From positions 271,631 to 335,630 of the IMG/VR virus record IMGVR_UViG_3300042391_000634: a stretch of 64,000 nucleotides of DNA, one strand, 5' to 3'. Below the pieces are notes generated by a model, which was not told where the DNA came from, did no database searches, and saw only the letters and a program-made list of their open reading frames with translations. Shown one piece after another: positions 1,703 through 63,046 of this stretch; positions within the stretch are counted from its first letter, which is position 1; the number at the start of each line of letters is the position of its first letter. The translations under genes were made by a program, and so were the position numbers.

Positions 1703-2963
1703 TAGATGGGATAGTGAAACCAATACCTTCAAATATAATGGAGGAGACAAATTCACATTTAATTTCCAACATCTATTATTACATTTTCAAATAGAAACAA
1801 AGGAACAAAATAAATTTGAAATTAAATCACACAATTTAAGTGAAGTTTATTTTAGGCCCGATTTAAATTTTTATTACCCAATCGCACACGGTAATATTGA
1901 TATAATAAATTTATTTGTTGAAAATGAAGAAAAGGAAACAGAAAAATTTGAAAAGTCACCTTTAAGTGATGAAGTTATTGAATGTTTAAAAAAATGTAAA
2001 AATCTTAAAGTGATTATAGTGACTGAACATGAACCAGATTATGAAACTGGATTTGTTAGGTTATTAGAATATCTCGAATTAAAAAAATTAGACCCAAAAC
2101 AATTTTATGTTATTAATAATAATGAAAGATTAAATGATTTAAAGAAAAAATATAACAGTGAAATAAATGTACATACGTTACATTTTATTGCACATTCATC
2201 TAATTTTTCATTAACAAATGCTGGAGGATGTAATTGGATTGATGATAAGGAAGGTAAAATGTTTATGTGTTTTAATAAAACACCAAAACATCATAGATAT
2301 GCTTTATTGTGTTTTTTAAAAAAACAAGGATTATTAGAAAAAATTAATTGGTCGTTGGTACCACCATACGATTGTTTTCCGATTGGACATTACTATGATA
2401 AAATCTTTACTAAAGAACAAAAGGAATATTTTAAGGATGAAATAATTTATTTTAATGAACTTAAGTTCAAAAGAAGTGACATGGAAGAAGATAAAAATTG
2501 GTTTAATTTATTTAATGAACCTAATACCGAAGGTTTCCCGTCGTGGATGAGAATACCTGAGTTCGGTATGAATTATGAAAATTCATATATTAATATTGTT
2601 ACTGAATCTAAATTTTTTGATGATTTATTTGTTACCCATATTAGTGAGAAATCATATAGACCATTTTTCTATTATCAATTACCAATGATATTGGCAACTC
2701 AATATCATATTAAAACAATGAAAGAGAAATATAATTTTGATTTCTTTGATGACATCATAAATCACTCTTATGATAATGAACCAAATCAAATGAGAAGATT
2801 AGAGATGTTTGTTGAAGAAATTAAAAGATTAGATGGAATACAAGACCAAGTTAAAGAGTTCTATAAGAACAATAAACAAAGATTTGAAGACAATAAACAA
2901 AAGGTATGGAACATGTTGAATATTGTTGAAAAAGATTATCAATTTTTTGAAAGTTTAATATAA
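1665..2963 (+). CDS. putative glycosyltransferase (VTES...SEK family)
   Basis: CFNKTPKHHR and INIVTES...HISEKSYRPF...SYD motifs; glycan gene neighbourhood. Confidence 0.45.
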   Translation: MEEKNKILNLCYDRWDSETNTFKYNGGDKFTFNFQHLLLHFQIETKEQNKFEIKSHNLSEVYFRPDLNFYYPIAHGNIDIINLFVENEEKETEKFEKSPLSDEVIECLKKCKNLKVIIVTEHEPDYETGFVRLLEYLELKKLDPKQFYVINNNERLNDLKKKYNSEINVHTLHFIAHSSNFSLTNAGGCNWIDDKEGKMFMCFNKTPKHHRYALLCFLKKQGLLEKINWSLVPPYDCFPIGHYYDKIFTKEQKEYFKDEIIYFNELKFKRSDMEEDKNWFNLFNEPNTEGFPSWMRIPEFGMNYENSYINIVTESKFFDDLFVTHISEKSYRPFFYYQLPMILATQYHIKTMKEKYNFDFFDDIINHSYDNEPNQMRRLEMFVEEIKRLDGIQDQVKEFYKNNKQRFEDNKQKVWNMLNIVEKDYQFFESLI

Positions 2964-3703
2964 TGAGAACACTTTGGACGTTTGGATGTAGTTTTACTGC
3001 GGAGTATGACCCAATCGATGGAATATTTTTTCCATTTGAAAATGATTTTGATAAATATAAAAAATGGAGAGGAGGTAACTTACCACCAGTTTGGCCGACC
3101 ATACTCGGAGAAAGATTAAACTGTAAGGTAATGAATTGTGCCGTTGGGGGTTCATCTAATTACAACATTTTCAATCAGTTCATTAATGTATGTGAGTTAA
3201 TAAAACAAGATGATATTGTGGTGTTTGGATGGACAAACCTTACAAGATTTATATCTGTAAATTTAGATGAAAATATCTTTACACAAATATTAGTTTCAGA
3301 AAATAACTTCGGAGGAACTGGTTTTTCAAAAAGAACAATAGAAGAAATAATGTATAATAGATCTCATCCTTTATGGGCATTAGAAGTAAACCAATGGATG
3401 AGATTTATAAATGTATATTTAAATAACGTTGGTGCTCATAATTTTTATTGGACGGCTGACGAGACAATATTCAATCAACATAATATTCAAGAAGATGATA
3501 CAAAGTGTATCGTTGTAAGAGATGGGGAAAGTAATAAAACAAACTTGTTGGGTTATTTGAACTTACCAATGTTCTTTGATGGAGTTCTTAAAGCAAGAAT
3601 TGTTGAAGAAACTAATGGTATTGTAATTGATGACCATATGGGAGAATTTGGGCACAAAAATCAAGCGGACTATTTCTATAACCATATCATAAAAAATATA
3701 TAA
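2963..3703 (+). CDS. SGNH/GDSL-like hydrolase or acyltransferase
   Basis: FGCSF, GSSN and C-terminal DDHMG motifs. Confidence 0.7.
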   Translation: MRTLWTFGCSFTAEYDPIDGIFFPFENDFDKYKKWRGGNLPPVWPTILGERLNCKVMNCAVGGSSNYNIFNQFINVCELIKQDDIVVFGWTNLTRFISVNLDENIFTQILVSENNFGGTGFSKRTIEEIMYNRSHPLWALEVNQWMRFINVYLNNVGAHNFYWTADETIFNQHNIQEDDTKCIVVRDGESNKTNLLGYLNLPMFFDGVLKARIVEETNGIVIDDHMGEFGHKNQADYFYNHIIKNI

Positions 3704-4326
3704 TGAGATTAATTACGTTTGGTGATAGTTGGACGGCAGGACATGGAATTGAGACAGATGTAAAATACAAAGAGGAACCGTTCCCTCACATGTTCATCCA
3801 AAAATTAAGAGACATGAACTCATGGCCAAGATGGGTCTCAGATAAATTAAAATGTGAATATATTAATTTAGGTGTTTGTGGTTATGGTAATGAATATATT
3901 TTAAAAGATATTAAAGAAACAGTTGAAAACGGGTTCATTAATAAAGATGATATTGTTATAGTAATGTTATCATATCCTTACCGTTATAAATCAAAAGACA
4001 TTCACAATGTGGTTGAAATATATCTATTAATGGAAGAATTATTGGGGGGATATAAACATTTTTATTTTAATTCTTTCTATCCGTCATTTAGAGAAGAGGA
4101 TGTGGACACAAAAAAATTACCTGAATATTTTATAAATCCAGATGGGTGCGTATCTGATGTATTAAGAAAGTATGAAATAAAAAACGATATAGGTGTTTGG
4201 GAGTATGAGAGTAGGTCAGTTTGGAATGATGAGAAAAATTTCTACGAAGGAGATTACCACCCAAATTTAAAGGGGTATAAAATAATTGCAAAACACATAT
4301 ATGACGAAATCAAACGAAGAATCTAA
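3703..4326 (+). CDS. SGNH/GDSL-like hydrolase
   Basis: FGDSW, NLGVCGYGN, DYHPNLKGY. Confidence 0.78.
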   Translation: MRLITFGDSWTAGHGIETDVKYKEEPFPHMFIQKLRDMNSWPRWVSDKLKCEYINLGVCGYGNEYILKDIKETVENGFINKDDIVIVMLSYPYRYKSKDIHNVVEIYLLMEELLGGYKHFYFNSFYPSFREEDVDTKKLPEYFINPDGCVSDVLRKYEIKNDIGVWEYESRSVWNDEKNFYEGDYHPNLKGYKIIAKHIYDEIKRRI

Positions 4327-6829: not shown

Positions 6830-7564
6830 ATGTTAATATATACAAATGGTTGTTCACATAGTGACGATCACCCAACACTCAAAGAGAGTTATGTTTGGCC
6901 TAATCAACTTATGAGTGGATTTACCAAATCATTTAACTATTATCATAATCAATCTATTTTACCTTTGACTTTAAGTGAAATAAAGGCATTAGATAATGAC
7001 TTTTTAGTTAATGATGCGAGATCTGGTGTTGGTAATGATAAGATATTTCATCAATCAATGGAATCCATATGTAAATTAATGAGTACAGGTAAAAAACCTG
7101 ATTTTGTTATAATACAATGGTCGGGACCAAATAGACGAGAACATTGTTTAATGGATGAAAAACCAGTATATGTAACTTTATATGATAACACAGAATACCA
7201 TTTAAAGTATGAACCGATGGGTAGTATGCATACAATTCATTATGTATATTGTTTACAACAATTTTTAATGAATCACGATATTCCTTATTATTTTTTCAAT
7301 TATATGCAATTTGACTATAGTATTACGGAATTAGAAATATATAAAAAAATCGATATAGGTAGATTCGTTGATTTTGGGTTACATAGTAGAACATTATTTA
7401 CGGGTTTAATCGACCTCTTTAAAGAAAAAAGGTTCAATAGAGATGAACAGGGTCATGCAAATGAGGAAGGAAATAAATTTATTGCGGATAAAATAATGGG
7501 GACAATAAAAAATGACCCATTAAATGAAAAATTTATTGAGAATTATTTCTCAAAATCAACTTAA
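6830..7564 (+). CDS. SGNH-like hydrolase
   Basis: NGCSH, SGVGN, IQWS, GHANEEGN. Confidence 0.68.
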   Translation: MLIYTNGCSHSDDHPTLKESYVWPNQLMSGFTKSFNYYHNQSILPLTLSEIKALDNDFLVNDARSGVGNDKIFHQSMESICKLMSTGKKPDFVIIQWSGPNRREHCLMDEKPVYVTLYDNTEYHLKYEPMGSMHTIHYVYCLQQFLMNHDIPYYFFNYMQFDYSITELEIYKKIDIGRFVDFGLHSRTLFTGLIDLFKEKRFNRDEQGHANEEGNKFIADKIMGTIKNDPLNEKFIENYFSKST

Positions 7565-12967: not shown

Positions 12968-13636
12968 ATGGCAACTCTTTGGACATTTGGAGATTCGTTT
13001 ACTGCAGGTGATGGTTGTGTGCAAAATATAGCAATTAGGGATGGTGATTTTAAATATTATAATGAATATAAACAATCGGATAGTGATATATGGTCAAATA
13101 TATTAAGTAAAACTATTGGATTTGAAGTAAAAAATATGGGAAAAAGTGGAGCAAGTAATGATTATATTTTAGATTCTATTATTGACAATTTTGATATGAT
13201 AGAACCAAATGATGTGGTTATAATTGAAAAAACATTTTACCAAAGATTTGATATTCCTAAATCTGGTGGTGATATATTCCAAACAATTTATGCTGAGGGC
13301 ATCTACCAACTTTCTATTGATTTAAAAATGAACAGATACTTTTGTGAAGATAAATTAGAAAGTGAAACAATATTAAATTATGGTGTTTTATTTGCTGGTC
13401 ATAAATTATTTAAACAAAGACACGATAAACGATTTAAATTTATAAAAACCCAATTGAATAACAAAGGAAACAAAATATTAATGTGGGACGTATTGGATGT
13501 TTTAAATGGTAAATTTGAAACAATATCGGAACATACAAAAGGTAAAATAAAAGATTATCATTTTAGTTTTAATGGTCACAAAACATTTAGTGAACTTTTA
13601 TTTAAAAAATTATACACCAAACCCGAATTAATTTAA
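12968..13636 (+). CDS. SGNH-like hydrolase or acyltransferase
   Basis: FGDSF, GASN, DYHFSFNGH. Confidence 0.72.
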   Translation: MATLWTFGDSFTAGDGCVQNIAIRDGDFKYYNEYKQSDSDIWSNILSKTIGFEVKNMGKSGASNDYILDSIIDNFDMIEPNDVVIIEKTFYQRFDIPKSGGDIFQTIYAEGIYQLSIDLKMNRYFCEDKLESETILNYGVLFAGHKLFKQRHDKRFKFIKTQLNNKGNKILMWDVLDVLNGKFETISEHTKGKIKDYHFSFNGHKTFSELLFKKLYTKPELI

Positions 13637-15837: not shown

Positions 15838-16127
15838 TTTTAAAAGAAAAAATATTATTTAGTAAAGAGGAGTGTCAATCCATTATTTTTTATGGGGGCA
15901 ATAATATTACAAATTGGGATATTAAAGATAGAAAATATCATTCACAGCCAATTACATATTCGTTGGGAAACAAATGGTTATTTGATAAACTTAAAAAATT
16001 TTTTGAAGAACAACTAAACGCTCAAATAAAAAAAAATAAAGAAGTTATTCATTTTCATAAATTTGTAAAAGGTGATTGGTTTTTAGAAAACGAACATATA
16101 AAAATAGAAACAAATAAATTAATATGA
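15834..16127 (+). pseudogene. internally deleted 2OG-Fe(II) oxygenase remnant
   Basis: Starts like its paralogues (LFSKEEC), reaches FHKFVKGDWF, then jumps to a C-terminal tail; no HxD...H...R. Confidence 0.5.
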
Positions 16128-16927
16128 AACCATTAAAATATTGGAAAAATGACACATTTGAAATATCATCATATCAATATAAATTGGAAGATAGGGTAAA
16201 TAAAAAATATCCCACATCTGGTTCGGATAATAGTGGTAAATGTCTTTATACTTACAATGAACTTGGTTTTAGAGGTGATAGTATTAAGAAACAAGGGTTT
16301 AAAGTAATGTCATTAGGTTGTTCAGTTACCGAAGGTGTTGGTGTAAATGACAATCAAACGTGGTCATCACAATTTGTAAATTTATTAACTAATGGGGTTG
16401 ATATGAATTTTGGTACAGGAGGTAGAAGTAATGACTTTATTTCGAGATGCTTATTATCATATTATGATATCATAAAACCAGATTTAGTTTTAGTTATGTA
16501 TACTTCACCAACTAGAAGAGAATATTATACCGAAAATAATGGAGTTGAACCATTTGTGGTTGGTAGTAAATGGGGTTGGTATGAACACCAAGAAGATGGT
16601 AGAAAGGCACATAAAATGTTATTTGAATTACAAAATGATAATGAAGATTTTATCAATTGGTATAAAAATCATTTATTAATTAAATATTTTTTAGAGTCTA
16701 AAGGTTGTAATTGGTTATGGAATGGTTGGTTTGACATACCAAAAGAATATGAAGAATTTAATAGATTTGATGGTGGTTATGAAAGATTTTTAGATTTAGG
16801 TGTAGATAATGGGCATCCAGGTCCAAACCACAATAAAACCTATGCACACAAACTACATGATTTTATAACAAAAAATTTCCCAAACTACATAAATAATTTA
16901 CCGAAAAATAAGCAAAATTTGATTTGA
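16124..16927 (+). CDS. SGNH-like hydrolase
   Basis: YNELGFRG, LGCSVTEG, GRSN, GHPGP. Confidence 0.72.
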   Translation: MKPLKYWKNDTFEISSYQYKLEDRVNKKYPTSGSDNSGKCLYTYNELGFRGDSIKKQGFKVMSLGCSVTEGVGVNDNQTWSSQFVNLLTNGVDMNFGTGGRSNDFISRCLLSYYDIIKPDLVLVMYTSPTRREYYTENNGVEPFVVGSKWGWYEHQEDGRKAHKMLFELQNDNEDFINWYKNHLLIKYFLESKGCNWLWNGWFDIPKEYEEFNRFDGGYERFLDLGVDNGHPGPNHNKTYAHKLHDFITKNFPNYINNLPKNKQNLI

Positions 16928-34940: not shown

Positions 34941-35624
34941 ATGAAAATAGGTGTTCAAGGTTGTTCCCATTCTTCCGACAGTTACGGACACCCGTGGCAT
35001 TACTATTTAGGTCAAGAATATAGTGCGGACATTAAATTTGGGGCATCCTCAGGTTCAGGTAATGAAATCAACATTGAGAAGGTTAAAATGTTAATAAATC
35101 GTTATCCTGATATGAAAACCTTTATTTTACAACTTACCGACCCCTCAAGATTAGATTTTGGTATAGATAATATTGATTATGATTGGTTATATAGAGATAA
35201 AGAATTAATAAATTTAAGACACTATACGGTTAGATTAAATAATAATGACGGCGAACTTAAACATCATTTTAGAAATAAATATGAGATACATGATTTTTTT
35301 AAGAATCATGTTTTAACATCAGATTTAAATATCAAATATAAAATTTTTCATACATTAATGTCAATTCAATACATATGTAATTTTTATGATATTAAAGTAA
35401 TTTTTATAAGTTGGTTTGTTGATTTACAATCACTTGCAAAAGAAATTGGTTATAGTGATATATTGGATAAAATGAACGTATTAAAAGGAACGGTTATGGA
35501 TTTTATTGATAAAAATAAAGTAATGGAAATCCCTGGTAACGGACACTACGGATCAAAAGAACATAAAAGAATATTTGAAGAATATATAAACCCACAATTA
35601 ATAAAATATAATATAAATGGATAA
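34941..35624 (+). CDS. SGNH-like hydrolase
   Basis: GCSH, GSGN, GHYG. Confidence 0.62.
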   Translation: MKIGVQGCSHSSDSYGHPWHYYLGQEYSADIKFGASSGSGNEINIEKVKMLINRYPDMKTFILQLTDPSRLDFGIDNIDYDWLYRDKELINLRHYTVRLNNNDGELKHHFRNKYEIHDFFKNHVLTSDLNIKYKIFHTLMSIQYICNFYDIKVIFISWFVDLQSLAKEIGYSDILDKMNVLKGTVMDFIDKNKVMEIPGNGHYGSKEHKRIFEEYINPQLIKYNING

Positions 35625-38652: not shown

Positions 38653-39285
38653 ATGAATACATTATGGACATTTGGAGATAGTTTAACCGATGGATTTAGA
38701 TCTAATGATACGTGGGCAAAAACGTATGTTGATTGGAAAGGTTATATTCCATTAACATATGGTGAAATTATATCTAAAGAATTAAATTACGAATTAATTA
38801 ATTTAGGTAAGGGTGGTTCAGACAACAACCTAATATTTGAATCATTTATTAAAAACATAGATAATATTAAAGATGGAGATATTGTAATAATAGGTTGGTC
38901 TGATATTGGTAGATTTAGATTAGCCACCAAATTAAATACATGGATATCATTTGTTCCTAATTTTAACAATAACCTGACAAATATGGAAAACATTAGTAAC
39001 CAAACAATAATGGAAGTATTTGTTAATAGGTTATCTGATGTCTATACCGATGAGGTCAATATATGGATTAATTTTATTAAAAAAACCATAAAAAATTTTA
39101 AAATTATTAATTGGTCAACATTTAATCAAGGTAAAATAAATGGTATTTATGTTAATGAAATTGAGAGAATTATAGATGAAACCAATGGACTTATAAAAGA
39201 CGCACATTTTAGTGAAAGGGGTCAAAAACAGTTATCTGAAATTTTATTAAATAAAATAAATGGTAATTATAACAAAATAATATAA
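38653..39285 (+). CDS. SGNH-like hydrolase
   Basis: FGDSL, GSDN, DAHFSERG. Confidence 0.72.
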   Translation: MNTLWTFGDSLTDGFRSNDTWAKTYVDWKGYIPLTYGEIISKELNYELINLGKGGSDNNLIFESFIKNIDNIKDGDIVIIGWSDIGRFRLATKLNTWISFVPNFNNNLTNMENISNQTIMEVFVNRLSDVYTDEVNIWINFIKKTIKNFKIINWSTFNQGKINGIYVNEIERIIDETNGLIKDAHFSERGQKQLSEILLNKINGNYNKII

Positions 39286-44590: not shown

Positions 44591-44920
44591 ATGGTTACAA
44601 TATCGGATAAAGCACTTAATCATGTTGTTCTGTTAATGATGGAAAAAGGAATAACACCTGACACCCATTTTCTTCGTGTTGGGGTTAAGGGAGGTGGATG
44701 TAGTGGATTATCTTACGCTATGGATTTTGATGATATGGTAACAGATATGGATGAAGTTGTTGATTTAAATGTCTTGAAAGTGATTATAGATAAAAAATCA
44801 GTTCTATATCTATATGGAACCGAATTAGATTATTCCGATGGATTAAACGGAAAAGGATTTAATTGGATTAACCCACAAGCTAGCCGCACTTGCGGATGTG
44901 GAGAAAGTTTTGCATTATGA
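44591..44920 (+). CDS. iscA: A-type Fe-S carrier (IscA/HesB family)
   Basis: RVGVKGGGCSGLSY, CGCGESF. Confidence 0.93.
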   Translation: MVTISDKALNHVVLLMMEKGITPDTHFLRVGVKGGGCSGLSYAMDFDDMVTDMDEVVDLNVLKVIIDKKSVLYLYGTELDYSDGLNGKGFNWINPQASRTCGCGESFAL

Positions 44921-45594
44921 TATATTATTTAGGGGACAGCCATACCGCAGGAATACATACACCTGATGAATTAGGTATTGATTATAAACATATAACATAC
45001 CCAAAGTATCTATCTAAAATGATGGGAATGGAATATGTTAATTTAGGTATACCTGGAAGTAATTTAGTTAATAATGTCAATGTTTTTATAGAAAACATGA
45101 AAGATATTATAGATAATGCTAAAATTGTATTTTTTCAATTTCAACATTTTCAAAATGCATATTTTAGATTTGATGAGGAAAATTTTAATTGGAAAGATTT
45201 AGCAATAAGAGATGATGATGTTTTAGATAGACTTAAAACTTTTAATCTAACTGAAGACGATAAGTATGTGTTAGTTAGTTATTTAAATAAGTTTGAAGAA
45301 CGAAGAAGTTGGTATGAAATGCAAAAGGTTTATTCTTTATTTAATCAATTAGAATTATACGGTATTAAATGTTATAGTTTATATTGGACTAAACCTGCAA
45401 TTATTAATACAATGGAAGATAAAAGAAATGTTATTTTCCCTAATAACATTAAGTTTGTAAACCAAATTGGTTTGACTACAATTAATGACGAAACTAACGG
45501 AAAGTGGGTGGATATGCATACAGGTACGGAAGGAAACAAAAAACTTGCTAGTTTTATTTATGATTTTATAGGTATTAATAAAAAAATCATTTAA
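44917..45594 (+). CDS. SGNH-like hydrolase
   Basis: LGDSH, NLGIPGSN, DMHTG; ATGA overlap with iscA. Confidence 0.7.
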   Translation: MIYYLGDSHTAGIHTPDELGIDYKHITYPKYLSKMMGMEYVNLGIPGSNLVNNVNVFIENMKDIIDNAKIVFFQFQHFQNAYFRFDEENFNWKDLAIRDDDVLDRLKTFNLTEDDKYVLVSYLNKFEERRSWYEMQKVYSLFNQLELYGIKCYSLYWTKPAIINTMEDKRNVIFPNNIKFVNQIGLTTINDETNGKWVDMHTGTEGNKKLASFIYDFIGINKKII

Positions 45595-45664: not shown

Positions 45665-45772
45665 ATGGAAATGTTAATTATAATTGGATTTGTAGTTTTT
45701 GCCGTAATGTCGGTATTCGGAACTATAAATTTAATAAGACAAATCAACAACATTAAGGATGAAAATCAATAA
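45665..45772 (+). CDS. 35-aa single-pass membrane peptide
   Basis: Translated by hand: MEMLIIIGFVVFAVMSVFG.... Confidence 0.45.
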   Translation: MEMLIIIGFVVFAVMSVFGTINLIRQINNIKDENQ

Positions 45773-46517
45773 AATTTTTGCCAATGGGTGTAGTTTCACA
45801 TATGGAGGAGGACTACATTGGGAAGATGTTAAAGAGATATATCGTAAGGAGTTAAATATTGATATTGTAAATCATTTAGATTATGCATACCCTAATGTAA
45901 TTGGTTATGAATTAGGTGTCGATGTGGTTAATAACTCAGTACCAGGAGGGTCTTCTAATAGATTGGTTAGAACAACCTATGAATATCTTTATGAAAATAA
46001 AGATAACTTAGATGGAACTTTTTTTATATTAGAAATACCACCATATTGGAGAGATGAGTTGTATTCAAATGAATTAAAAAGAACCATCAATTTAACAATA
46101 ACAAGTATTCATTCATATACAGATATTACAGACTTTGCAAACGGTAACCCAAGAGAAGATCTATCAAAAATTTACAAAGACTTAACAAATTATTTTTATA
46201 ATTTTGTTGAGGATGATTTTGAAAAAAATAAAATGATGGCAACCTTCTTTGGTTTAATATCTTATATAAAACTATTGGGATTAAATTATCTGATTATTGA
46301 TAGTGGGGACTTTCAAATGTATCTTAAGAACCATAATTTATCAAATGACGATTATAATTTTATTTGGTTTGATAAAGATGCTTTATGTAATTGGATGAAT
46401 AAACATGAAATATTAATTAAACATGAAACCAATGGATTATCTAAAGATGAACATTTAGGTATTGAGGGTAATAAAATAGTTGCTCAAAGAATAATTAATA
46501 AAATGAAAGATGATTGA
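45759..46517 (+). CDS. SGNH-like hydrolase
   Basis: NGCSF, GGSSNR, DEHLGIEGN. Confidence 0.72.
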   Translation: MKINKIFANGCSFTYGGGLHWEDVKEIYRKELNIDIVNHLDYAYPNVIGYELGVDVVNNSVPGGSSNRLVRTTYEYLYENKDNLDGTFFILEIPPYWRDELYSNELKRTINLTITSIHSYTDITDFANGNPREDLSKIYKDLTNYFYNFVEDDFEKNKMMATFFGLISYIKLLGLNYLIIDSGDFQMYLKNHNLSNDDYNFIWFDKDALCNWMNKHEILIKHETNGLSKDEHLGIEGNKIVAQRIINKMKDD

Positions 46518-53880: not shown

Positions 53881-54080
53881 AACCACTAACTTACTACAAA
53901 GGACCTGAGATATTTTGGTTCCGAATCTTTGGTTATGGACTATCCTTTAGGTCTTTTAGACACGGACATGTACCGTTCTCAATACGGTATGGTTATCGTA
54001 AAACCTATAAACTTTTTGGTTATAGAGTTGAATTTCTTAAAAAAGATAAAATTAAATACTATGGACGCAGACAGTTTTAA
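53877..54080 (+). CDS. hypothetical basic/aromatic protein
   Basis: ATGA-coupled ORF. Confidence 0.5.
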
Positions 54081-54351
54081 TCAAAAGTATAAAGAATACA
54101 TACCAAATGATTGGTATGGTTTAGGGTTTAACATTCCTGAAGTAACTGATTACTTGGATAAAATAATGGAAGAATTAATTTTAATACCAGGATTTGAACT
54201 TCACCAAATTAAATTAAAATTTAATACGGCGAGATTTTATTTTGAAACTAATTGGAAAGATAAGAATTTAGAATTAGCCCTACAGAATAAAATCGAAGAC
54301 AAAATAAACGAATTAGTAAAAGAACACGACGAAAAAAAGAACTCATTATGA
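54061..54351 (+). CDS. hypothetical protein (QIKxKF..RFY family)
   Basis: Start moved to ATG 54061. Confidence 0.5.
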   Translation: MDADSFNQKYKEYIPNDWYGLGFNIPEVTDYLDKIMEELILIPGFELHQIKLKFNTARFYFETNWKDKNLELALQNKIEDKINELVKEHDEKKNSL

Positions 54352-54992
54352 TATACATCAGCATAGATATTGAAACCAGCGGTTTAGACCACGAGAAACA
54401 CAAAGTATTATCTATCGGTGCCATCATCGAAGATACCGAAAAGAAATTACCATACGAAGAATGTCCTAAGTTCAATGCAATTGTTCTTCAAAATGAAATA
54501 ACAGGTTCACCGAGAGCACTAACAATGAACAAAGATTTAATTGCAATGATAGGTGAATACTTGGAGGGTAGTGATGATATTAGATTTAATATGGATACCA
54601 TTCTTAATTATTCTTTTTATAAACAAGATGATGTTGTAAAAAAGTTTTACGAGTTCCTTTGGGTAAATGGATATGGTGACGCAATACCAAATCAATTATT
54701 GGTTACATCGAGAATTGATTCAAACTCAAAACCAATTACAATTAATGTTGCAGGTAAAAACTTTGGGACATTTGATAAGTTATTTTTACAAGAATTACCT
54801 TGGTGGCAAAAACTAATCAGAACTCGTCAAAGAGTGTTGGACCCCGCAATCTTAATGGTTGATTGGAAGAACGATAAGTCCTTACCAAACTTAACACAAT
54901 GTAAAGAACGTGCAGGTATTAATGGTATTGTGACACACGATGCACTTGAGGATGCGTGGGACGTTATTGAAGTAATGAGAAAATTTTATTAA
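54348..54992 (+). CDS. DEDDh 3'-5' exonuclease
   Basis: IDIETSG, N.GTFD, HDALEDA. Confidence 0.82.
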   Translation: MIYISIDIETSGLDHEKHKVLSIGAIIEDTEKKLPYEECPKFNAIVLQNEITGSPRALTMNKDLIAMIGEYLEGSDDIRFNMDTILNYSFYKQDDVVKKFYEFLWVNGYGDAIPNQLLVTSRIDSNSKPITINVAGKNFGTFDKLFLQELPWWQKLIRTRQRVLDPAILMVDWKNDKSLPNLTQCKERAGINGIVTHDALEDAWDVIEVMRKFY

Positions 54993-54995
54993 AAT

Positions 54996-55145
54996 ATGAA
55001 AAAATACGAATACCTATCAAGACCATTACAAACTACCGAACATCTTAACATTTTAGGTCAAGAAGGTTGGGAACTAGTATGTATAAATCAAAACATCTTT
55101 ATCTTTAAGAGAGAGATTGTTGAAGAAAAAACTAAAAAGAAATAA
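54996..55145 (+). CDS. DUF4177-like small protein
   Basis: Translated by hand: YEY...LNILGQEGWELV...FKRE. Confidence 0.65.
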   Translation: MKKYEYLSRPLQTTEHLNILGQEGWELVCINQNIFIFKREIVEEKTKKK

Positions 55146-55146
55146 T

Positions 55147-55392
55147 ATGGCAAAGGCAACATTAGAGTTTGATTTAAATGATTCCGATGATATGATAGCA
55201 CATCTAAGAGCGGTCAAGTCTTTAGATATGGCGATGGCTTTATGGGAAATTGTACATAACACTAAAAAAGGTTTAGAATGGTCAATGGAAGACAAAGAAA
55301 TTGACAAATATGATGCTTTGGAATTGGTGTATAAAAAGATACATGAAATCTTAGATGACCATAACATTAATACAGATGAATTAATTAACTAA
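55147..55392 (+). CDS. conserved phage hypothetical protein
   Basis: MAKATLEFDL.... Confidence 0.6.
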   Translation: MAKATLEFDLNDSDDMIAHLRAVKSLDMAMALWEIVHNTKKGLEWSMEDKEIDKYDALELVYKKIHEILDDHNINTDELIN

Positions 55393-55444
55393 AATTTGGA
55401 ATTACAAATAAAAATATTTATATTTTAGAATAAAACTATACACC

Positions 55445-56506
55445 ATGTCAAGAATTAAAGATTTAAGAACTAATGAAGATTACAACCTAAACATCGTTTC
55501 TATTTTAGAAATGTTTAGTCCTGAAAGTAAATCAAAATATACGGAGACATTACTTCGTATGATGAAGAACACACCAAACCTAAAAGAACACACCAAAGAA
55601 ATTAAATTGTTCTTAGTTGATAAGTTTCCATTTATAGAAAAAAGTAAATTAGATTTGATGAGTGACATCCAAATGATGTTATTATATAAGTTTATCGATG
55701 GATTTTTTAATACAGAAGATTTACAGAAATATAGAAAGTTCTGTGAATACAACGAAAGAAATTTAATTGAAGAAAATGATTTAACAAAATACAAATCATT
55801 TGAACAGATGATAGCAGCAATGGGTGTTGCCGAAATGAAATCTGAAGAGAAAGAATTAGAAACACAAGTTATTAAAATACATGAAGATGCTGAGTGGTTA
55901 TTGATTAGACCTTTAACATTCAAATCATCTTGTAAGTATGGTGCAAATACTAAATGGTGCACAACTACAGAACACAATCAAGAATACTATAACAAATACG
56001 CTAAGAGAGGTGTGTTAGTTTATTGTATTAACAAGAAAAATGGATATAAGGTTGCTGCGTTTTATTCATTAGATAAAAACGAACCGGAGTTTTCATATTG
56101 GAATCAAAAGGATACTCGTATCGATTCAACTGATTCACAATTACCGTTAGAATTAATTGGTTTTATTCGTGATTACGTTAAAGACCCTAAAGTAAAATCA
56201 AATACGGCAATGTTAACTGGTGATGCTAAGAAGAAAGAGTTGGCACAATCAAATAATAAAAGAGGTAATGCGATTAGTGAGAGAGTTGCGTCAGCGGTAA
56301 GAAGAGCACAAGAAGAGATTGAAGTATCTGAACCGATGGCAATGGAAGAATCCGTAATGGAACAACCTGAATTACCATTTTATGACCAAAGAAGCGATGA
56401 AACGGAGGAGGAAGGACCAACAATATGTTACCAACCCGAACAACCTGAAAGTTCTTTAGATAGAATGCAATGGTCATCAACTACCACTACATCAGAAACT
56501 GAATAA
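55445..56506 (+). CDS. hypothetical protein (YGxxTKWCTT motif)
   Basis: 353-aa ORF with an acidic tail. Confidence 0.6.
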   Translation: MSRIKDLRTNEDYNLNIVSILEMFSPESKSKYTETLLRMMKNTPNLKEHTKEIKLFLVDKFPFIEKSKLDLMSDIQMMLLYKFIDGFFNTEDLQKYRKFCEYNERNLIEENDLTKYKSFEQMIAAMGVAEMKSEEKELETQVIKIHEDAEWLLIRPLTFKSSCKYGANTKWCTTTEHNQEYYNKYAKRGVLVYCINKKNGYKVAAFYSLDKNEPEFSYWNQKDTRIDSTDSQLPLELIGFIRDYVKDPKVKSNTAMLTGDAKKKELAQSNNKRGNAISERVASAVRRAQEEIEVSEPMAMEESVMEQPELPFYDQRSDETEEEGPTICYQPEQPESSLDRMQWSSTTTTSETE

Positions 56507-59338: not shown

Positions 59339-60103
59339 ATGGCGACATTATTTGGATTCGGTGATAGTTTTACCGGCGGACATTTTTTAGATAAAGACTT
59401 TGAACCATATAAACAGTGGAAGGAGTATAGGGGAGGAGATTTACCACCAGTGTGGATAGATTTATTAGGTGATAAACTTAATATGAATGTTATAAACTAT
59501 GGACATGGGGGTAACTCAAATCAAGAAATATTTGAAACAATATGTAACAACTGTTATCAATTTAAAAAAGAGGATATTGTTATAATTAACTGGACTGAGA
59601 TACATAGATTTAGATGGGTCGCATATGGTAATTATAGGGCTCCCGAAGGTATTTTTAATGTAGATTATTGGAGAAGAATATCTGCCGCTTCTGATGATAG
59701 TGAAGAAATTAAGAACCAAACAAAAATGGATATTATTCAAAATAGATCTTCTTATTTGTATATTGAAGAGATCTATAATTATGAAAAAATTATAGATCAA
59801 CTATCAAAATCAATTGGATTTAATGTTTTCTATTGGTCTGGTGATAGTGATATTATTTACAGATTACCGTCAGATAAATTAAAACAAAAGAAATATATTA
59901 TTAATGATTTAATATCTAATATTACAGAAAATCCCCCCAACATCTTTAGATTAGGTGGTATTTTCTTTGATACAATAAAACATTACGGTGGGTTAATAGT
60001 TAAAGAAGAAACAAATGAAAATTGTACCGATACACATTTAGGAGAAAGTGGACATAGAGTTCAATTTGAATTATTTTATAATTATATTATAAAAAATATT
60101 TAA
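59339..60103 (+). CDS. SGNH-like hydrolase
   Basis: FGDSF, GNSN, DTHLGESGH. Confidence 0.72.
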   Translation: MATLFGFGDSFTGGHFLDKDFEPYKQWKEYRGGDLPPVWIDLLGDKLNMNVINYGHGGNSNQEIFETICNNCYQFKKEDIVIINWTEIHRFRWVAYGNYRAPEGIFNVDYWRRISAASDDSEEIKNQTKMDIIQNRSSYLYIEEIYNYEKIIDQLSKSIGFNVFYWSGDSDIIYRLPSDKLKQKKYIINDLISNITENPPNIFRLGGIFFDTIKHYGGLIVKEETNENCTDTHLGESGHRVQFELFYNYIIKNI

Positions 60104-60870
60104 TGAGTACATTATTTACATTTGGTTGTAGTTTTAGTGAGGAATTTAGTGTTCTATTACCAAGAACATCCCCCAATACAAGAGTTGACTATATTGAACA
60201 ATACTTTAATGGTGTTGCACCAGATTCATGGCCTACGATGTTATCTAAAAAGTTAGGATTTGATATTAAAAATTATTCAGGTAATGGGGGGTATAAAGAC
60301 CCAATAAATAACATAGGTGAAGGTAATTGTAATCAATCGGTATTAAACAACATCGCATATTATTGTAATCAGTTTAAGAAAGGGGACATTGTTATTGTTG
60401 AATGGACGTATATTGAAAGGTTTAAATGGGCGAACGAAACAGGTAAGTCAATGATATCTGTTTATCCCGCGTTTGTTCCTGGTACTGGAATACCTGATTA
60501 TCCAGATTACATCGATAATAACACAGCGGAGAACATATTTGTTAATAGAACAAATCCAATATGGATTAATGAATTATTCATTCAACAGAAACTATTAAAT
60601 CAATTTGCAGATAATACAGGATTTAATATATTTTATTGGACTGTAGATAATAATATTATAAATTATAAGAATAAAGAAATTAAAAATGATAAAAAGTATT
60701 TGTTATCAGATACGTTGGGTGAAAGAGATTATATGAATTTATTTAAAGAAGAAGGTGCTAAAACAATAATAGAAGAAACAAACGAAAAAGTCAGAGATTG
60801 GCATTATGGTGTAACGGGTCATCAGGTTCAATGTGATTTGTTTTATAACTATATTATAAAAAATATTTAA
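60103..60870 (+). CDS. SGNH-like hydrolase
   Basis: FGCSF, GNCN, DWHYG. Confidence 0.7.
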   Translation: MSTLFTFGCSFSEEFSVLLPRTSPNTRVDYIEQYFNGVAPDSWPTMLSKKLGFDIKNYSGNGGYKDPINNIGEGNCNQSVLNNIAYYCNQFKKGDIVIVEWTYIERFKWANETGKSMISVYPAFVPGTGIPDYPDYIDNNTAENIFVNRTNPIWINELFIQQKLLNQFADNTGFNIFYWTVDNNIINYKNKEIKNDKKYLLSDTLGERDYMNLFKEEGAKTIIEETNEKVRDWHYGVTGHQVQCDLFYNYIIKNI

Positions 60871-61610
60871 TGAATACATTATTTACATTTGGATGTAGTT
60901 ATACTGAAGATTTTGAAAGAGTTCTTGAAATTACTAAAAATAGTGATTTTATACCCGCACAAAGAAGATATGTTGAAAATCATTTAGATGGTAGAACACC
61001 AAAATCGTGGCCTCAATTATTGAGTGAAAAATTGGAGATAGATTTAAAAAATTATGGAGGAGGTGGAATGTCAAATTATCAAATATTTGAAGAGATATGT
61101 GAACATTGTAATGAATTTAAAGAAAACGATATTGTAATAATTGGATGGACACATATAACGAGATTTAGGTGGCCATTCAACAACGGGGGTTGGTCCTCTA
61201 TTTTTTCAGATTTTACCGAAACCACTTCTGAGTTGATGAGTAAAATAACACACAGTGAAATATTAGTTAATAGAACAAATAAAATGTTTATTAATGAAAT
61301 ATATCAATATCAAAAACTATTAGAACAATTTTGTAAATTACTTGGTGTTAAATTATATTTTTGGTCATCAGATGATAACATTATATATAAAGAAAATAAA
61401 GAATTTTTTACCGATAAAAAATATTTATTAAATGATTTAATTTCAAATAATAACAACATCTTTAACATCATACAAAAAAATGGTGGTAAAACAATAAACG
61501 AAGAAACTAATGGTGAAATACCTGATAATCATTTAGCGGAAACTGGACATAGAGTACAAGCTGAACTTTTTTACAATCACATTATAAATGGGAAACAAAA
61601 AATTATTTAA
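60870..61610 (+). CDS. SGNH-like hydrolase
   Basis: FGCSY, GMSN, DNHLA. Confidence 0.7.
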   Translation: MNTLFTFGCSYTEDFERVLEITKNSDFIPAQRRYVENHLDGRTPKSWPQLLSEKLEIDLKNYGGGGMSNYQIFEEICEHCNEFKENDIVIIGWTHITRFRWPFNNGGWSSIFSDFTETTSELMSKITHSEILVNRTNKMFINEIYQYQKLLEQFCKLLGVKLYFWSSDDNIIYKENKEFFTDKKYLLNDLISNNNNIFNIIQKNGGKTINEETNGEIPDNHLAETGHRVQAELFYNHIINGKQKII

Positions 61611-62241
61611 CAATGGATACCTAATTGGATCTTTTGACTATGATAGTATCATTAAAGATGATATAGATTTAGTAATTGAAAAATCAAAAGATACTAATAA
61701 TTTATCTTGTAGATATGACATTGCCGGTAAAGACCTAATTAAATTACATTTCACTAAGAGCTGCACTTACGAACAAAGTTTAATGTATGATAAATACGTT
61801 AAAGAAACTGATGAAAATGTATTCGGGGTATTTCAAAAATGGTTTAGTATAGACATACCAGTGAGTGACAATTTTAGAAAATTATCTTTCGAATTGATAA
61901 AGGATTTATACGATTTAAAAGATGATAGTAAATTGATTTATAATGATGAATATACAATGTTTAATGATGGTTGTTTTATAAATTCTCACGTTGATAATGA
62001 TAAAGATTCTAAAAGAAGAATATGTGTGGTTTTGATTTATCTTAATAAAGAAATACCTAAAGATGCCATTGGAGGTGGTTTAACGATTGAAGATTCACAC
62101 GGTGTTAAAGTTACAGTTGAACCAAAGTATACAACATATACCATTTTAGATTTTACAAATAATAATTTAAGACATGAGGTATCTAAAGTAAAAAATTGGA
62201 ATAGATATACCTACATTAACTTTATTGATTTAATAGATTAA
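61588..62241 (+). CDS. 2OG-Fe(II) oxygenase
   Basis: HVD, LIYLN, GGGL, HEVSKV, RY. Confidence 0.8.
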   Translation: MGNKKLFNNGYLIGSFDYDSIIKDDIDLVIEKSKDTNNLSCRYDIAGKDLIKLHFTKSCTYEQSLMYDKYVKETDENVFGVFQKWFSIDIPVSDNFRKLSFELIKDLYDLKDDSKLIYNDEYTMFNDGCFINSHVDNDKDSKRRICVVLIYLNKEIPKDAIGGGLTIEDSHGVKVTVEPKYTTYTILDFTNNNLRHEVSKVKNWNRYTYINFIDLID

Positions 62242-62242
62242 C

Positions 62243-63046
62243 ATGAATACAATACACGCATTTGGAGACAGTTATACAGAGGGACAACCATACGAATGTA
62301 CTTACCCACCATTTATTCAATGGAGAGAATTAAGAGGTGGAAACCTACCATTATGTTGGGTTGATATATTAGGAGAGAAGTTAGGTATGGAAACAATTAA
62401 TCGTGGAGTTGGTGGTAATTCTAATGTTCAAATATTTCAGGATGTTTGTGAACACGCACATACTTTTAAGAAAGGGGACATTGTGTTTGTAAATTGGGCA
62501 TATAGGGATAGGTTTAGATGGGGATGTTTAATAAAATACGCTGACGGATCTTGGTCACATAAAGATAAAGAAGGTAATCCATTACACACTTGGAGAAAGT
62601 TAAGTTCACATAATGGTAATCCTGACGATTTTAATTATATCTCTAAATCAACCAAGGAGGAAATAGTTGTTAACAGATCAACCGGTTTGTATATTGATGA
62701 GATTTACAATTATGAGAATATAATTGAACAGTATGCCGATGCGAGAGGATTTGAAATTTATTTTTGGTCTACTGACAATGATATAATATATTCGTTACCT
62801 CCTGAAAAATACAACCAAAAGAAATATATATTACATAATGTAATAACACCACGTCAGTATGTTAAGGAATATCATGGGGGTGACTTTATGTCTATGATTA
62901 TGTTTAAAGGTGGTGAAACCATATATATGGAAACAAACCACGTTGTTGAGGATGATACTCATTTAGGTGAGAAAGGACATAAAATACAAGCTGAATTATT
63001 TTACGAATACATTTTAAAATATGAGAATATTAGTATTAAAACATAG
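62243..63046 (+). CDS. SGNH-like hydrolase
   Basis: FGDSY, GNSN, DTHLGEKGH. Confidence 0.72.
   Translation: MNTIHAFGDSYTEGQPYECTYPPFIQWRELRGGNLPLCWVDILGEKLGMETINRGVGGNSNVQIFQDVCEHAHTFKKGDIVFVNWAYRDRFRWGCLIKYADGSWSHKDKEGNPLHTWRKLSSHNGNPDDFNYISKSTKEEIVVNRSTGLYIDEIYNYENIIEQYADARGFEIYFWSTDNDIIYSLPPEKYNQKKYILHNVITPRQYVKEYHGGDFMSMIMFKGGETIYMETNHVVEDDTHLGEKGHKIQAELFYEYILKYENISIKT

What the first reader, a model, noticed from the sequence alone, without database searches (positions are those of the whole stretch)
2963..63046. Thirteen divergent SGNH paralogues in 64 kb
Seen: genes at 2963, 3703, 6830, 12968, 16124, 34941, 38653, 44917, 45759, 59339, 60103, 60870 and 62243 all keep G-[DC]-S, a G-x-x-N-like block and a terminal D/G-x-H. 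Many also share an EETNG-like segment. Some are tandem and others sit singly among unrelated genes. Known: SGNH proteins act as esterases or O-acyltransferases on glycans. Inference: an expanded, mobile repertoire that edits acylation of virion or host surface glycans.
Basis: partly seen in the sequence, partly recalled or inferred. Interest (0 to 1): 0.6.

Follow-up and report, generated by a model that had tools for sequence, protein, structure and literature searches.

The report
Virus-only SGNH esterase family, expanded
An uncultured 336-kb freshwater jumbo phage carries 17 genes of a virus-specific, uncharacterised branch of the SGNH esterase/acyltransferase superfamily (13 of them in this window); about half sit inside the phage's sugar-building gene islands, so they probably tailor acyl groups on a phage-made glycan, though no activity has been measured.

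Summary
All 13 ORFs are true paralogues. All-vs-all BLASTP and an iterative HMM recover exactly those 13 in the window. Block I G-[CD]-S and the C-terminal His are present in 13/13. AlphaFold models of a core copy (pLDDT 94.5) and of the most divergent copy (82.8) match SGNH enzymes almost exclusively (Z 9–14). The window is the last 64 kb of a complete 335.6-kb lake jumbo myovirus, which holds four more family genes. The family is virus-restricted, has no PHROG, falls below most Pfam cut-offs, and is always annotated "hypothetical". The paralogues are old: nearly every copy has its own orthologue in related phages. They are under purifying selection (median dN/dS 0.12, against 0.10 for other genes). 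Whole genes are still gained and lost between close relatives, and near-identical gene junctions favour unequal crossing-over. No copy has a signal peptide or TM segment. Eight of the 17 genes lie within one or two genes of sugar-nucleotide, glycosyltransferase or carbamoyltransferase genes. My best reading is cytoplasmic Ser-His(-Asp) O-acyl esterases/transferases that tailor a phage-built glycan. That function is inferred, not shown. This is a new variant of a known kind.

The parts
2963..3703 (+). SGNH paralogue (246 aa), first gene of the variable array between the 432-aa gene and DUF5672
   Evidence: HMM E 1e-84; GCS, GSSN, WTxxxR, EETNG and DDH motifs; orthologues in G001 and L020, dN/dS 0.05-0.07
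3703..4326 (+). SGNH paralogue (207 aa), directly upstream of DUF5672 in five of six relatives
   Evidence: Pfam Lipase_GDSL_2 2.8e-6, below cut-off; HMM E 3e-18 at first iteration; synteny; dN/dS 0.03-0.10
6830..7564 (+). SGNH paralogue (244 aa), next to the carbamoyltransferase; lacks the block V Asp (QGH)
   Evidence: DUF6071 4.9e-5; HMM E 8e-9; G001 orthologue 95% identical, dN/dS 0.12
12968..13636 (+). SGNH paralogue (222 aa), upstream of the radical-SAM and GT9 genes; lies in a segment that G001 replaces with one holding a different paralogue
   Evidence: Pfam Lipase_GDSL 24.5 bits, above the 23.6 cut-off; BLASTP to 38653 2e-17; segment replacement
16124..16927 (+). SGNH paralogue (267 aa) with a ~57-aa N-terminal extension; always next to the GT4-FkbM gene; NGH in block V
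   Evidence: HMM E 4e-5 at first iteration; orthologues in G001, G002 and G003 with 99% support; synteny; dN/dS 0.30
34941..35624 (+). Most divergent SGNH paralogue (227 aa), between the GT1 operon and the DNA methylases; NGH in block V
   Evidence: hhalign of independent profiles 95%, E 3.8e-8; AF2 pLDDT 82.8; SGNH fold Z up to 13.9; dN/dS 0.20
38653..39285 (+). SGNH paralogue (210 aa), upstream of PcfJ-like genes
   Evidence: Pfam Lipase_GDSL 5e-4 over the full length; core HMM member; dN/dS 0.34
44917..45594 (+). SGNH paralogue (225 aa; the ORF may start at TTG 44890); present here but absent at the same site in close relative G001
   Evidence: Pfam Lipase_GDSL 24.1 bits, above cut-off; HMM E 1e-10; 733 bp here against 226 bp in G001
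45759..46517 (+). SGNH paralogue (252 aa), DUF6071-like
   Evidence: DUF6071 1.2e-4; HMM E 5e-10; G001 orthologue 93% identical, dN/dS 0.08
59339..60103 (+). SGNH paralogue (254 aa; the ORF may start at TTG 59321), first gene of the tandem cluster
   Evidence: BLASTP to 62243 5e-71; dN/dS 0.20
60103..60870 (+). SGNH paralogue (255 aa), tandem cluster; has a 12-residue insertion in block II
   Evidence: BLASTP to 60870 1e-57; alignment; dN/dS 0.10
60870..61610 (+). SGNH paralogue (246 aa), tandem cluster; absent in G001; this is the copy that was modelled
   Evidence: AF2 pLDDT 94.5, pTM 0.92; all 50 best PDB matches are SGNH, Z 9.3-12.4; absence in G001; contigs break at 60868-60870 in 4 lake samples
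62243..63046 (+). SGNH paralogue (267 aa), separated from the tandem cluster by a 2OG-Fe(II) oxygenase gene
   Evidence: Pfam Lipase_GDSL_2 5.9e-6 over the full length; dN/dS 0.05
60089..60120 (+). Gene-junction repeat (3' end of one SGNH gene plus 5' end of the next), 97% identical to 60856-60887
   Evidence: the repeat finder D13; D8 extends the similarity to 170 nt at 75%
60856..60887 (+). Second copy of the junction repeat; likely site of unequal crossing-over
   Evidence: G001 lacks the gene between the two junctions; contig breakpoints
527..34410 (.). Glycan-synthesis and decoration island that embeds six of the SGNH genes. It holds UDP-Glc dehydrogenase, DUF5672, carbamoyltransferase, an APS-kinase-like gene, 2OG/Asp-Arg hydroxylases, a radical SAM enzyme, GT9 x2, GT4-FkbM, methyltransferases, GT2 x4, an epimerase, GT1 x2, and a collagen/S74 fibre gene at 22540-24567.
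   Evidence: Pfam scans. The island continues upstream of the window to about G000 258 kb.

Best explanation
The 13 genes (17 in the whole genome, 18 domains) encode small, soluble, cytoplasmic enzymes of a virus-restricted and so far uncharacterised branch of the SGNH/GDSL superfamily. Each most likely works by the usual SGNH chemistry. The block I Ser, at about residue 10, attacks an ester or thioester. It is activated by the C-terminal His, which an Asp two residues upstream assists in 10 of 13 copies. The block II Gly stabilises the oxyanion, together with a nearby conserved Asn or Arg. The resulting acyl-enzyme is then resolved by water (esterase) or by a sugar hydroxyl (O-acyltransferase). 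The substrates are most likely sugar-nucleotide-, lipid- or protein-linked intermediates of the unusual glycan that the phage's own islands build. Those islands encode nucleotide-sugar enzymes, GT1/2/4/9 transferases, O-methyl- and carbamoyl-transferases, and an HldE/HldD-like heptose set. The old, divergent paralogues would supply different regio- or substrate specificities. Arrays that gain and lose genes by unequal crossing-over at conserved gene junctions would vary the decoration between phage strains. Shown here: paralogy, the fold, retention of the catalytic residues, purifying selection, gene flux, lack of export signals, and genomic association with glycan genes. Inferred: catalytic activity, esterase versus transferase, the substrate, and whether the final glycan sits on the virion or on the infected cell.
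For: Paralogy. Fold: for a core copy and for the most divergent copy. The top hits include carbohydrate esterases CE2/CE3/CE12/CE16, the O-acetyltransferases PatB and OatA, and phage G7C gp63.1. Catalytic Ser and His are present in 13/13 copies despite 17-45% identity. Purifying selection: 11 orthologue pairs have dN/dS 0.03-0.34 with median 0.12, against 0.10 for 48 other genes, Mann-Whitney p 0.21. Old, retained paralogues: the tree needs 17 label changes for 18 G000 rows, and orthologue pairs have 98-100% SH-aLRT support. Glycan context: for the window. Outside it, copy 54832 shares an operon with PfkB, a cytidylyltransferase-like gene and an epimerase, and copy 269016 lies between an RmlC-like gene and an epimerase. 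Conserved pairings across relatives are the 3703-type with DUF5672 and the 16124-type with GT4-FkbM. The one cultured-phage member, Mosig_00086, sits in a similar island with a carbamoyltransferase, radical-SAM enzymes and a sugar aminotransferase. Gene flux. Cytoplasmic location: the Ser is at residue 9-10 of most copies and no hydrophobic segment is present.
Against: No biochemical data exist for any member. Nine of the 17 genes (38653, 44917, 45759, the 59339-62243 cluster, 83785, 22333) have no glycan gene as a neighbour. Their neighbours are DNA methylases, PcfJ-like genes, 2OG oxygenases, a homing endonuclease or unknowns. The canonical block III Asn is missing, and the Asp spacing is D-x-H rather than D-x-x-H, so the detail of the catalytic machinery is uncertain. 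No acyl-donor partner (AT3 or MBOAT) was seen in the window. No RNA data are available. Structural neighbours also include lipases and thioesterases, so the fold alone does not single out carbohydrates.
Confidence: 0.5

Rival explanations
1. The proteins are general lipolytic or thioesterase enzymes (lysophospholipase, acyl-CoA or acyl-ACP thioesterase-like). They would remodel or scavenge host lipids or envelope precursors during takeover or lysis, without any link to the phage's own glycan.
For: TesA, PlaA, lipases and GDSL 'lipolytic' proteins are among the structural matches with similar Z. The proteins are cytoplasmic. Half of the copies are not next to sugar genes.
Against: Seventeen divergent genes retained for a long time are hard to explain by one bulk lipid function. 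Eight genes sit inside sugar operons, and their pairings with DUF5672 and GT4-FkbM are conserved. No lipid-metabolism genes were seen nearby.
Confidence: 0.17
2. The proteins tailor a hypermodified DNA base, for example by adding or removing acyl groups on sugar- or amino-modified nucleotides, rather than acting on a surface or virion glycan.
For: Copy 34941 abuts two DNA methylase genes. Radical-SAM, carbamoyltransferase, kinase-like and 2OG enzymes in the island could in principle serve base hypermodification.
Against: The island is dominated by GT1/2/4/9 transferases, nucleotide-sugar epimerases and dehydratases, RmlC-like and HldE/HldD-like genes and a fibre gene. These are typical of polysaccharide or protein glycosylation. 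I did not search for a hydroxymethylase or a DNA glycosyltransferase.
Confidence: 0.06
3. The proteins are counter-defence or signalling esterases that destroy ester-containing host immune signals or toxins, and the expansion reflects an arms race.
For: Gene-level presence/absence between close relatives, and location in a hypervariable genome arm, are typical of arms-race loci.
Against: There is no match to any PADLOC model. The paralogues are old and under ordinary purifying selection, not diversifying selection. They are embedded in sugar operons.
Confidence: 0.06
4. Most copies are decaying duplicates or non-catalytic pseudoenzymes with a structural or binding role.
For: Three copies lack the block V Asp. 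One out-of-window match (22333-22968) aligns only partly, with neither block I nor block V.
Against: Ser and His are retained in 13/13 window copies. All ORFs are intact. dN/dS ranges from 0.03 to 0.34 and is not distinguishable from other genes. Orthologues are kept across phages that have diverged to 40-60% identity.
Confidence: 0.03

Closest known systems
SGNH/GDSL carbohydrate esterases (e.g. rhamnogalacturonan acetylesterase 1deo; CE2 and CE3 acetyl-xylan esterases 2waa, 2vpt, 7ddy)
   Same: Same alpha/beta/alpha fold (Z 10-12, 155-170 residues aligned). The nucleophile Ser lies in an N-terminal G-x-S motif, the block II Gly is present, and the His lies at the C-terminus.
   Different: Sequence identity is only 8-19%. 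There are about 80 residues of insertions. G-x-N-D of block III is replaced by W-[TS]-x-x-x-R. The Asp spacing is D-x-H, or the Asp is missing. An extra conserved E-T-N segment is present. The proteins are cytoplasmic, viral, and have no carbohydrate-binding module.
Peptidoglycan or glycan O-acetyltransferase SGNH domains (PatB 7tjb; OatA C-terminal domain 6vjp, 5ug1)
   Same: Same fold (Z 10-12.3). They show that this fold can transfer acyl groups to glycans rather than hydrolyse them.
   Different: Those enzymes act outside the cytoplasm and receive the acyl group from a membrane AT3 or MBOAT partner. The phage proteins have no signal peptide or TM segment, and no such partner was seen in the window.
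SGNH deacetylase domains of phage tail fibres and tailspikes (G7C gp63.1 4qnl; SFP21A Gp09 9lna; Pan3 tailspike 9vyh; Acinetobacter and Klebsiella phage esterases, PMC11058221 and PMC12115436)
   Same: These are phage-encoded SGNH domains acting on surface polysaccharide acyl groups, with a similar fold (Z 9.3-11.2).
   Different: Those are domains inside large trimeric virion fibres, with one or two per genome. Here the proteins are free-standing (207-267 aa), have no fibre domain, and number 17 genes per genome.
Pfam DUF6071 (PF19547) and unnamed viral clusters of the ESM Atlas and BFVD; Mosig_00086 of Pelagibacter phage Mosig EXVC030M
   Same: These are the closest relatives by sequence and shape. 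DUF6071 hits reach 4.9e-5 and 1.2e-4. Atlas clusters are 100% viral with TM 0.69-0.77. Forty BFVD hits are mostly 'uncultured Caudovirales phage'. Mosig_00086 scores HMM E 2e-19 and lies in a similar sugar-type island.
   Different: All of them are uncharacterised and annotated as hypothetical. The DUF6071 scores are below the gathering cut-off. Mosig has a single copy in the fetched 16.7-kb region, against 17 genes in this genome.
LPS or glycan gene clusters of aquatic T4-like phages (P-SSM2; PMC1079782)
   Same: [quoted passage not shown]
   Different: That paper makes no mention of an SGNH gene family. The island here is larger (about 48 kb plus a second locus) and lies in a jumbo phage unrelated to T4-like cyanophages (PolB about 24% identical to the nearest cultured phage).

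Membership tests
SGNH/GDSL hydrolase superfamily | Three-layer alpha/beta/alpha SGNH fold | tested here: met
   The AF2 model of 60870 (pLDDT 94.5) has SGNH enzymes as all 50 best PDB matches, Z 9.3-12.4. The model of 34941 (pLDDT 82.8) has 49 of 50, Z up to 13.9.
SGNH/GDSL hydrolase superfamily | Block I: nucleophilic Ser in G-x-S near the N-terminus | tested here: met
   G-[CD]-S is present in 13/13 window copies. The Gly and Ser are invariant in A1, and the Ser is at least 90% conserved in the 98-sequence A2.
SGNH/GDSL hydrolase superfamily | Block II: oxyanion-hole Gly | tested here: met
   The Gly is invariant in A1 (G63 of the first sequence). It aligns to the block II Gly of rhamnogalacturonan acetylesterase in the HMMER alignment.
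SGNH/GDSL hydrolase superfamily | Block III: Asn in G-x-N-D | tested here: inconclusive
   The canonical motif is absent. The equivalent strand end reads W-[TS]-x-x-x-R, with the Arg in 12/13 copies. A near-invariant Asn sits three residues after the block II Gly instead. I could not decide which of the two fills the oxyanion hole without the model coordinates.
SGNH/GDSL hydrolase superfamily | Block V: catalytic His with Asp (D-x-x-H) | tested here: inconclusive
   The His is present in 13/13 copies. The Asp is at -2 (D-x-H) in 10/13 and absent in 6830, 16124 and 34941. The PDB chain 8gkd, an SGNH esterase, aligns with D-V-H at the same place.
SGNH/GDSL hydrolase superfamily | Pfam GDSL models (PF00657, PF13472) at gathering score | tested here: not met
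   Only 12968 (24.5 bits) and 44917 (24.1 bits) pass PF00657's cut-off of 23.6. Six other copies hit below the cut-offs, and five have no GDSL hit. The proteins belong to the superfamily by fold and catalytic blocks, not to those Pfam families as curated.
DUF6071 (PF19547) | Score at or above the gathering cut-off of 27 bits | tested here: not met
   The best scores are 23.5 bits (6830) and 22.2 bits (45759). Atlas clusters labelled DUF6071 are structural neighbours, TM 0.69-0.71. This is a sister group or a distant member.
Phage tail-fibre or tailspike SGNH deacetylases | SGNH domain embedded in a multi-domain virion fibre protein | tested here: not met
   All window copies are single-domain proteins of 207-267 aa that start at block I, or after a 57-aa extension in 16124.
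AT3/MBOAT-dependent extracytoplasmic O-acyltransferases (OatA, PatB, OafA type) | Signal peptide or membrane anchor, plus a membrane acyl-translocating partner | tested here: not met
   No hydrophobic 19-residue window exceeds a mean Kyte-Doolittle value of 1.6. No AT3 or MBOAT domain was found in the Pfam scans of the window's ORFs. The rest of the genome was not fully scanned.
Known anti-phage defence proteins (PADLOC) | Match to any PADLOC model | tested here: not met
   0 of 13 copies match at E 0.01 or better.

The most novel reading that the evidence does not exclude
A virus-only SGNH clade forms a combinatorial 'acyl-editing cassette array'. Old paralogues with distinct specificities are shuffled in and out of conserved slots of a jumbo phage's glycan island by unequal crossing-over at near-identical gene junctions. 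Co-occurring strains of a lytic phage would then display differently O-acylated glycans on their virions or on infected cells. That would be a phage counterpart of bacterial serotype conversion and of giant-virus fibril glycosylation.
Probability: 0.25. Interest if true: 0.75.

Novelty: new variant of a known kind. Interest (0 to 1): 0.55.

Why it matters
SGNH enzymes in phages are known mainly as single deacetylase domains of tail fibres. Here a whole family of free-standing cytoplasmic SGNH proteins is restricted to viruses and invisible to PHROGs and to most Pfam cut-offs. It has been kept for a long time in up to 17 genes per genome, tied to one of the largest sugar-decoration islands seen in a phage. 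If the proteins tailor a phage-built glycan, they point to elaborate and strain-variable glycan chemistry in abundant freshwater jumbo phages. They would also offer a ready set of divergent esterases or acyltransferases with possibly distinct regiospecificities. The family has 207 clusters (50% identity) at E 1e-30 or better, and it deserves a name and a model so that it stops being annotated as 'hypothetical'.

Tried and rejected
1. The search for related loci with the 13-sequence alignment failed because no stretch was conserved enough. With the single protein 60870 it found nothing. The carbamoyltransferase worked instead.
2. The genome search on metagenome loci L015, L016 and L018 and on L039, the 334-kb relative, was not possible because those records are not held. 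Copy numbers in relatives therefore come from incomplete records (43-65% complete).
3. PHROGs gave no family for any copy, and PADLOC gave none.
4. tblastn of 60870 and 45759 against 50,697 cultured phage records gave no match. 3703 gave one marginal hit, which the family HMM then confirmed.
5. Sequence search of the PDB gave only E of about 0.02.
6. The hhalign runs of 34941 and 16124 against A2 were discarded as evidence, because A2 contains those sequences. I replaced them with independent profiles for 34941. For 16124 the independent support is the first-iteration HMM hit at E 4e-5 from a seed that excluded it, plus conserved orthologues.
7. No RNA run holds the phage, so expression is untested.
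8. Read laying returned only short Logan contigs. Its joints have short sides (21-48 nt) at 85% likeness, so I treat them as suggestive only.
9. The careful tree did not finish in time. The quick IQ-TREE with SH-aLRT support is what I used, and G004 was left out as a near-duplicate of G002.
10. Literature searches for DUF6071 (no paper), DUF5672 (one irrelevant paper) and SGNH with jumbo phage (only tail-fibre esterases) gave nothing on this family.

Full report
WHAT THE WINDOW IS

The window is the last 64 kb (G000:C1:271631-335630) of a 335,630-bp IMG/VR virus record that CheckV rates 100% complete. The two ends of the record share about 125 bp, so the assembly is circular or terminally redundant and the window's position at the end is arbitrary. 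GC content is 31%.

The genome encodes a tail sheath, a family-B DNA polymerase, SbcC and collagen-like fibres, plus a tmRNA and four tRNAs. It is a jumbo myovirus. Its polymerase is only about 24% identical to that of the nearest cultured phages. Near-identical DNA occurs in lake-water and freshwater metagenomes from about 18 studies.

- All 13 ORFs exist.
- All-vs-all BLASTP connects them, with E-values down to 5e-71.
- An HMM seeded with seven copies recruits five more at E 3e-18 to 4e-5 and then 34941 at E 1e-4. It recruits nothing else among the 91 ORFs of the window.
- The alignment shows G-[CD]-S in 13/13, an invariant block II Gly followed by a near-invariant Asn, and a C-terminal His in 13/13.
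- D-x-H is present in 10/13. Copies 6830, 16124 and 34941 have x-G-H.
- An E-T-N segment just upstream of the His is clear in 8/13.
- The canonical block III G-x-N-D is replaced by W-[TS]-x-x-x-R.

Pfam sees the copies only weakly. Two pass the PF00657 cut-off, and the others score below the cut-offs or hit DUF6071. PHROGs has no matching family.

THE FOLD IS SGNH

An AlphaFold2 model of 60870, built on a 98-sequence alignment, has pLDDT 94.5 and pTM 0.92. All 50 best matches among 48,161 PDB representatives are SGNH/GDSL enzymes, with Z 9.3-12.4 and 155-190 residues aligned. They include carbohydrate esterases, PatB, OatA-C and the phage G7C fibre esterase. Foldseek agrees.

I tested the weakest member, 34941, independently:
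- A profile of its own orthologues matches a core-family profile that holds no window sequence, at 95% probability and E 3.8e-8.
- Its model (pLDDT 82.8) gives SGNH matches up to Z 13.9.

HOW BIG AND HOW OLD THE FAMILY IS

- The whole genome has four more family genes: 269016-269849(-), 54832-55590(-), 22333-22968(-, partial match) and a 598-aa protein with two tandem domains at 83785-85581.
- A profile search of 1.84 billion cluster representatives finds 207 clusters at E 1e-30 or better and about 10,900 at E 1e-3 or better. The latter shade into the general superfamily.
- Close homologues are all metagenomic 'hypothetical proteins' without a Pfam call, several of them on contigs of 120-309 kb.
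- The nearest ESM Atlas clusters are 100% viral, and BFVD hits are uncharacterised proteins of uncultured tailed phages.
- Among 50,697 cultured phage records I found one member, Mosig_00086 of Pelagibacter phage Mosig (family HMM E 2e-19). It lies in an island with a carbamoyltransferase, radical-SAM enzymes, a sugar aminotransferase and an epimerase.

A maximum-likelihood tree of 62 domains from this phage and its relatives scatters the 18 G000 domains. It needs 17 label changes. Most G000 copies pair with an orthologue in G001, G002, G003 or metagenome contigs, with 98-100% SH-aLRT support. The duplications therefore predate the divergence of these phages, and the copies have been retained.

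SELECTION

Against the close relative G001 (80-92% nucleotide identity), 11 SGNH orthologue pairs have dN/dS of 0.025-0.343 with a median of 0.124. For 48 other genes the median is 0.104 (Mann-Whitney p = 0.21). More distant pairs give 0.03-0.20. Selection is not relaxed.

GENE FLUX

G000 and G001 are collinear but differ by whole SGNH genes:
- 44917 is present only in G000 (733 bp there against 226 bp in G001).
- 60870 is present only in G000.
- A divergent extra copy lies beside the carbamoyltransferase only in G001.
- The segment 9384-16076, which holds 12968, is replaced in G001 by a segment with a different paralogue.

The slot between the conserved 432-aa gene and DUF5672 holds 2 SGNH genes in G000 and G001, 3 in G002, 4 in G003, L016 and L018, and 5 in L015. 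The paralogue types in the slot differ.

Adjacent genes can have very different histories. Against L016, 3703 is 95% identical while 2963 is only 49% identical.

The junction between consecutive tandem genes is nearly identical. The stretches 60089-60120 and 60856-60887 are 97% alike, and a 170-nt stretch around them is 75% alike. This is an obvious substrate for unequal crossing-over. In four independent lake metagenomes, several contigs break exactly at 60868-60870 and continue into different upstream sequence. That result is only suggestive, because the contigs are short.

One out-of-window copy abuts a SegE-like GIY-YIG endonuclease.

CONTEXT AND LIKELY ROLE

Positions 527-34410 of the window form a dense sugar island:
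- UDP-Glc dehydrogenase, DUF5672 and a carbamoyltransferase;
- an APS-kinase-like kinase, 2OG and Asp/Arg hydroxylases, and a radical SAM enzyme;
- two GT9 genes, one with a weak TibC N-domain hit;
- a GT4-FkbM fusion and several O-methyltransferases;
- four GT2 genes, an epimerase and two GT1 genes;
- a collagen/S74 fibre gene in the middle.

The island continues upstream with RmlC-like, epimerase/dehydratase and split TPP-enzyme genes, where copy 269016 is embedded. Copy 54832 lies in an operon with PfkB, a cytidylyltransferase-like gene and an epimerase. That is an HldE/HldD-like set, and it fits the GT9 heptosyltransferases.

In all, 8 of the 17 genes are within one or two genes of sugar enzymes. 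Two pairings are conserved across relatives: the 3703-type with DUF5672 and the 16124-type with GT4-FkbM. The other nine genes have unrelated or unknown neighbours.

No copy has a signal peptide, a TM segment or a fibre domain. The enzymes must therefore act inside the infected cell.

I conclude that they are most likely Ser-His(-Asp) O-acyl esterases or transferases that tailor intermediates of a phage-built glycan. Whether that glycan ends up on the virion or on the host envelope is open. The latter was proposed for the LPS clusters of cyanophage P-SSM2 (PMC1079782). Activity, substrate and direction of the reaction are inferences.

RIVALS

- Lipid or thioester hydrolases. The fold allows it, but it explains the number of genes and their context poorly.
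- DNA-hypermodification tailoring.
- Counter-defence esterases. There is no PADLOC match, and selection is ordinary purifying selection.
- Decaying duplicates or pseudoenzymes. This is largely refuted.

COMPARISON WITH THE KNOWN, AND NOVELTY

The proteins belong to the SGNH superfamily by fold and by blocks I, II and V. They differ in block III and in the Asp spacing. They fail the curated cut-offs of the GDSL Pfam families and of DUF6071. They are neither tail-fibre deacetylases nor AT3-dependent extracytoplasmic transferases.

I found no paper that describes this family or such an expansion. I therefore rate it a new variant of a known kind. It is a virus-specific, unnamed SGNH clade with an exceptional and long-maintained expansion, coupled to a very large phage glycan island.

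Noticed in passing
L003:12519-14492 (G000 52519-54492, - strand) and window 14707-15837, 20352-22475, 22540-24567: The phage encodes an HldE/HldD-like set (PfkB kinase, cytidylyltransferase-like gene, epimerase) and two GT9 heptosyltransferase-like genes. One GT9 has a weak TibC N-domain hit (E 8e-4). The GT9 genes flank a collagen/S74 fibre gene. This suggests the phage makes its own nucleotide-heptose and may heptosylate a fibre protein or the host LPS core.
   Followed up: partly
window 14707-15837 vs 20352-22475: The 376-aa GT9 protein is 60% identical to the C-terminal half of the 707-aa GT9 protein (BLASTP 9e-154), with 300-nt DNA repeats at 71-79% identity. This is a second duplicated family inside the island.
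   Followed up: no
window 10773-11366, 11380-11961, 61588-62241; L014:2823-5435: There are several 2OG-Fe(II) oxygenase or Asp/Arg-hydroxylase genes, one fused between two epimerase domains. 11380 and 61588 are paralogues, and 61588 sits inside the tandem SGNH cluster. Their function is unknown.
   Followed up: no
window 1665-2963 (and 64-525): The conserved 432-aa gene that opens the variable SGNH slot belongs to a virus-only family of hypothetical proteins (ESM Atlas score 0.97, 100% viral). There is only a weak lead to GT10 fucosyltransferases (0.79). It shares a 35%-identical 87-aa stretch with ORF 64-525.
   Followed up: partly
G001 and G002 (relatives of the window's genome): IMG/VR classes these 211-kb relatives as 'provirus', although they are collinear with this complete jumbo phage. 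The bacterial-looking glycan island may have been mistaken for host flank.
   Followed up: no
L005:6275-6679 and 10452-11590 (G000 86-92 kb): The phage carries a tmRNA gene (tag ATSTVAVA) and four tRNAs (Glu, Ser, Met, Thr). Just upstream are a SegE-like GIY-YIG endonuclease gene and the two-domain SGNH gene.
   Followed up: no
window 35617-36309 and 36290-36958: Two adjacent N6/N4 DNA methylase genes lie directly downstream of SGNH copy 34941.
   Followed up: no
window 39525-41456 and 41492-42910: Two paralogous large genes (23% identity, E 6e-20), the first with a PcfJ-like domain. Their function is unknown.
   Followed up: no
window 22767-23180: A 9-nt periodic repeat array (25 registers) encodes the collagen-like Gly-X-Y region of the fibre protein, which ends in a Peptidase_S74 intramolecular chaperone domain.
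   Followed up: no
L055:7932-8672 (Pelagibacter phage Mosig, MT647606.1 63388-64128): Mosig_00086, annotated as hypothetical, is a member of this SGNH family (HMM E 2e-19). It is embedded in an island with a carbamoyltransferase, MoaA-like radical-SAM genes, an ArnB-like aminotransferase, an Asp/Arg hydroxylase and an epimerase. It is a cultured system in which the family could be studied.
   Followed up: partly
G000 ends (1-125 and 335506-335630): The record's two ends repeat the same sequence of about 125 bp inside a coding region. The 'linear' record is therefore a circularly closed assembly, and the SGNH-rich arm adjoins the genes at the start of the record.
   Followed up: no
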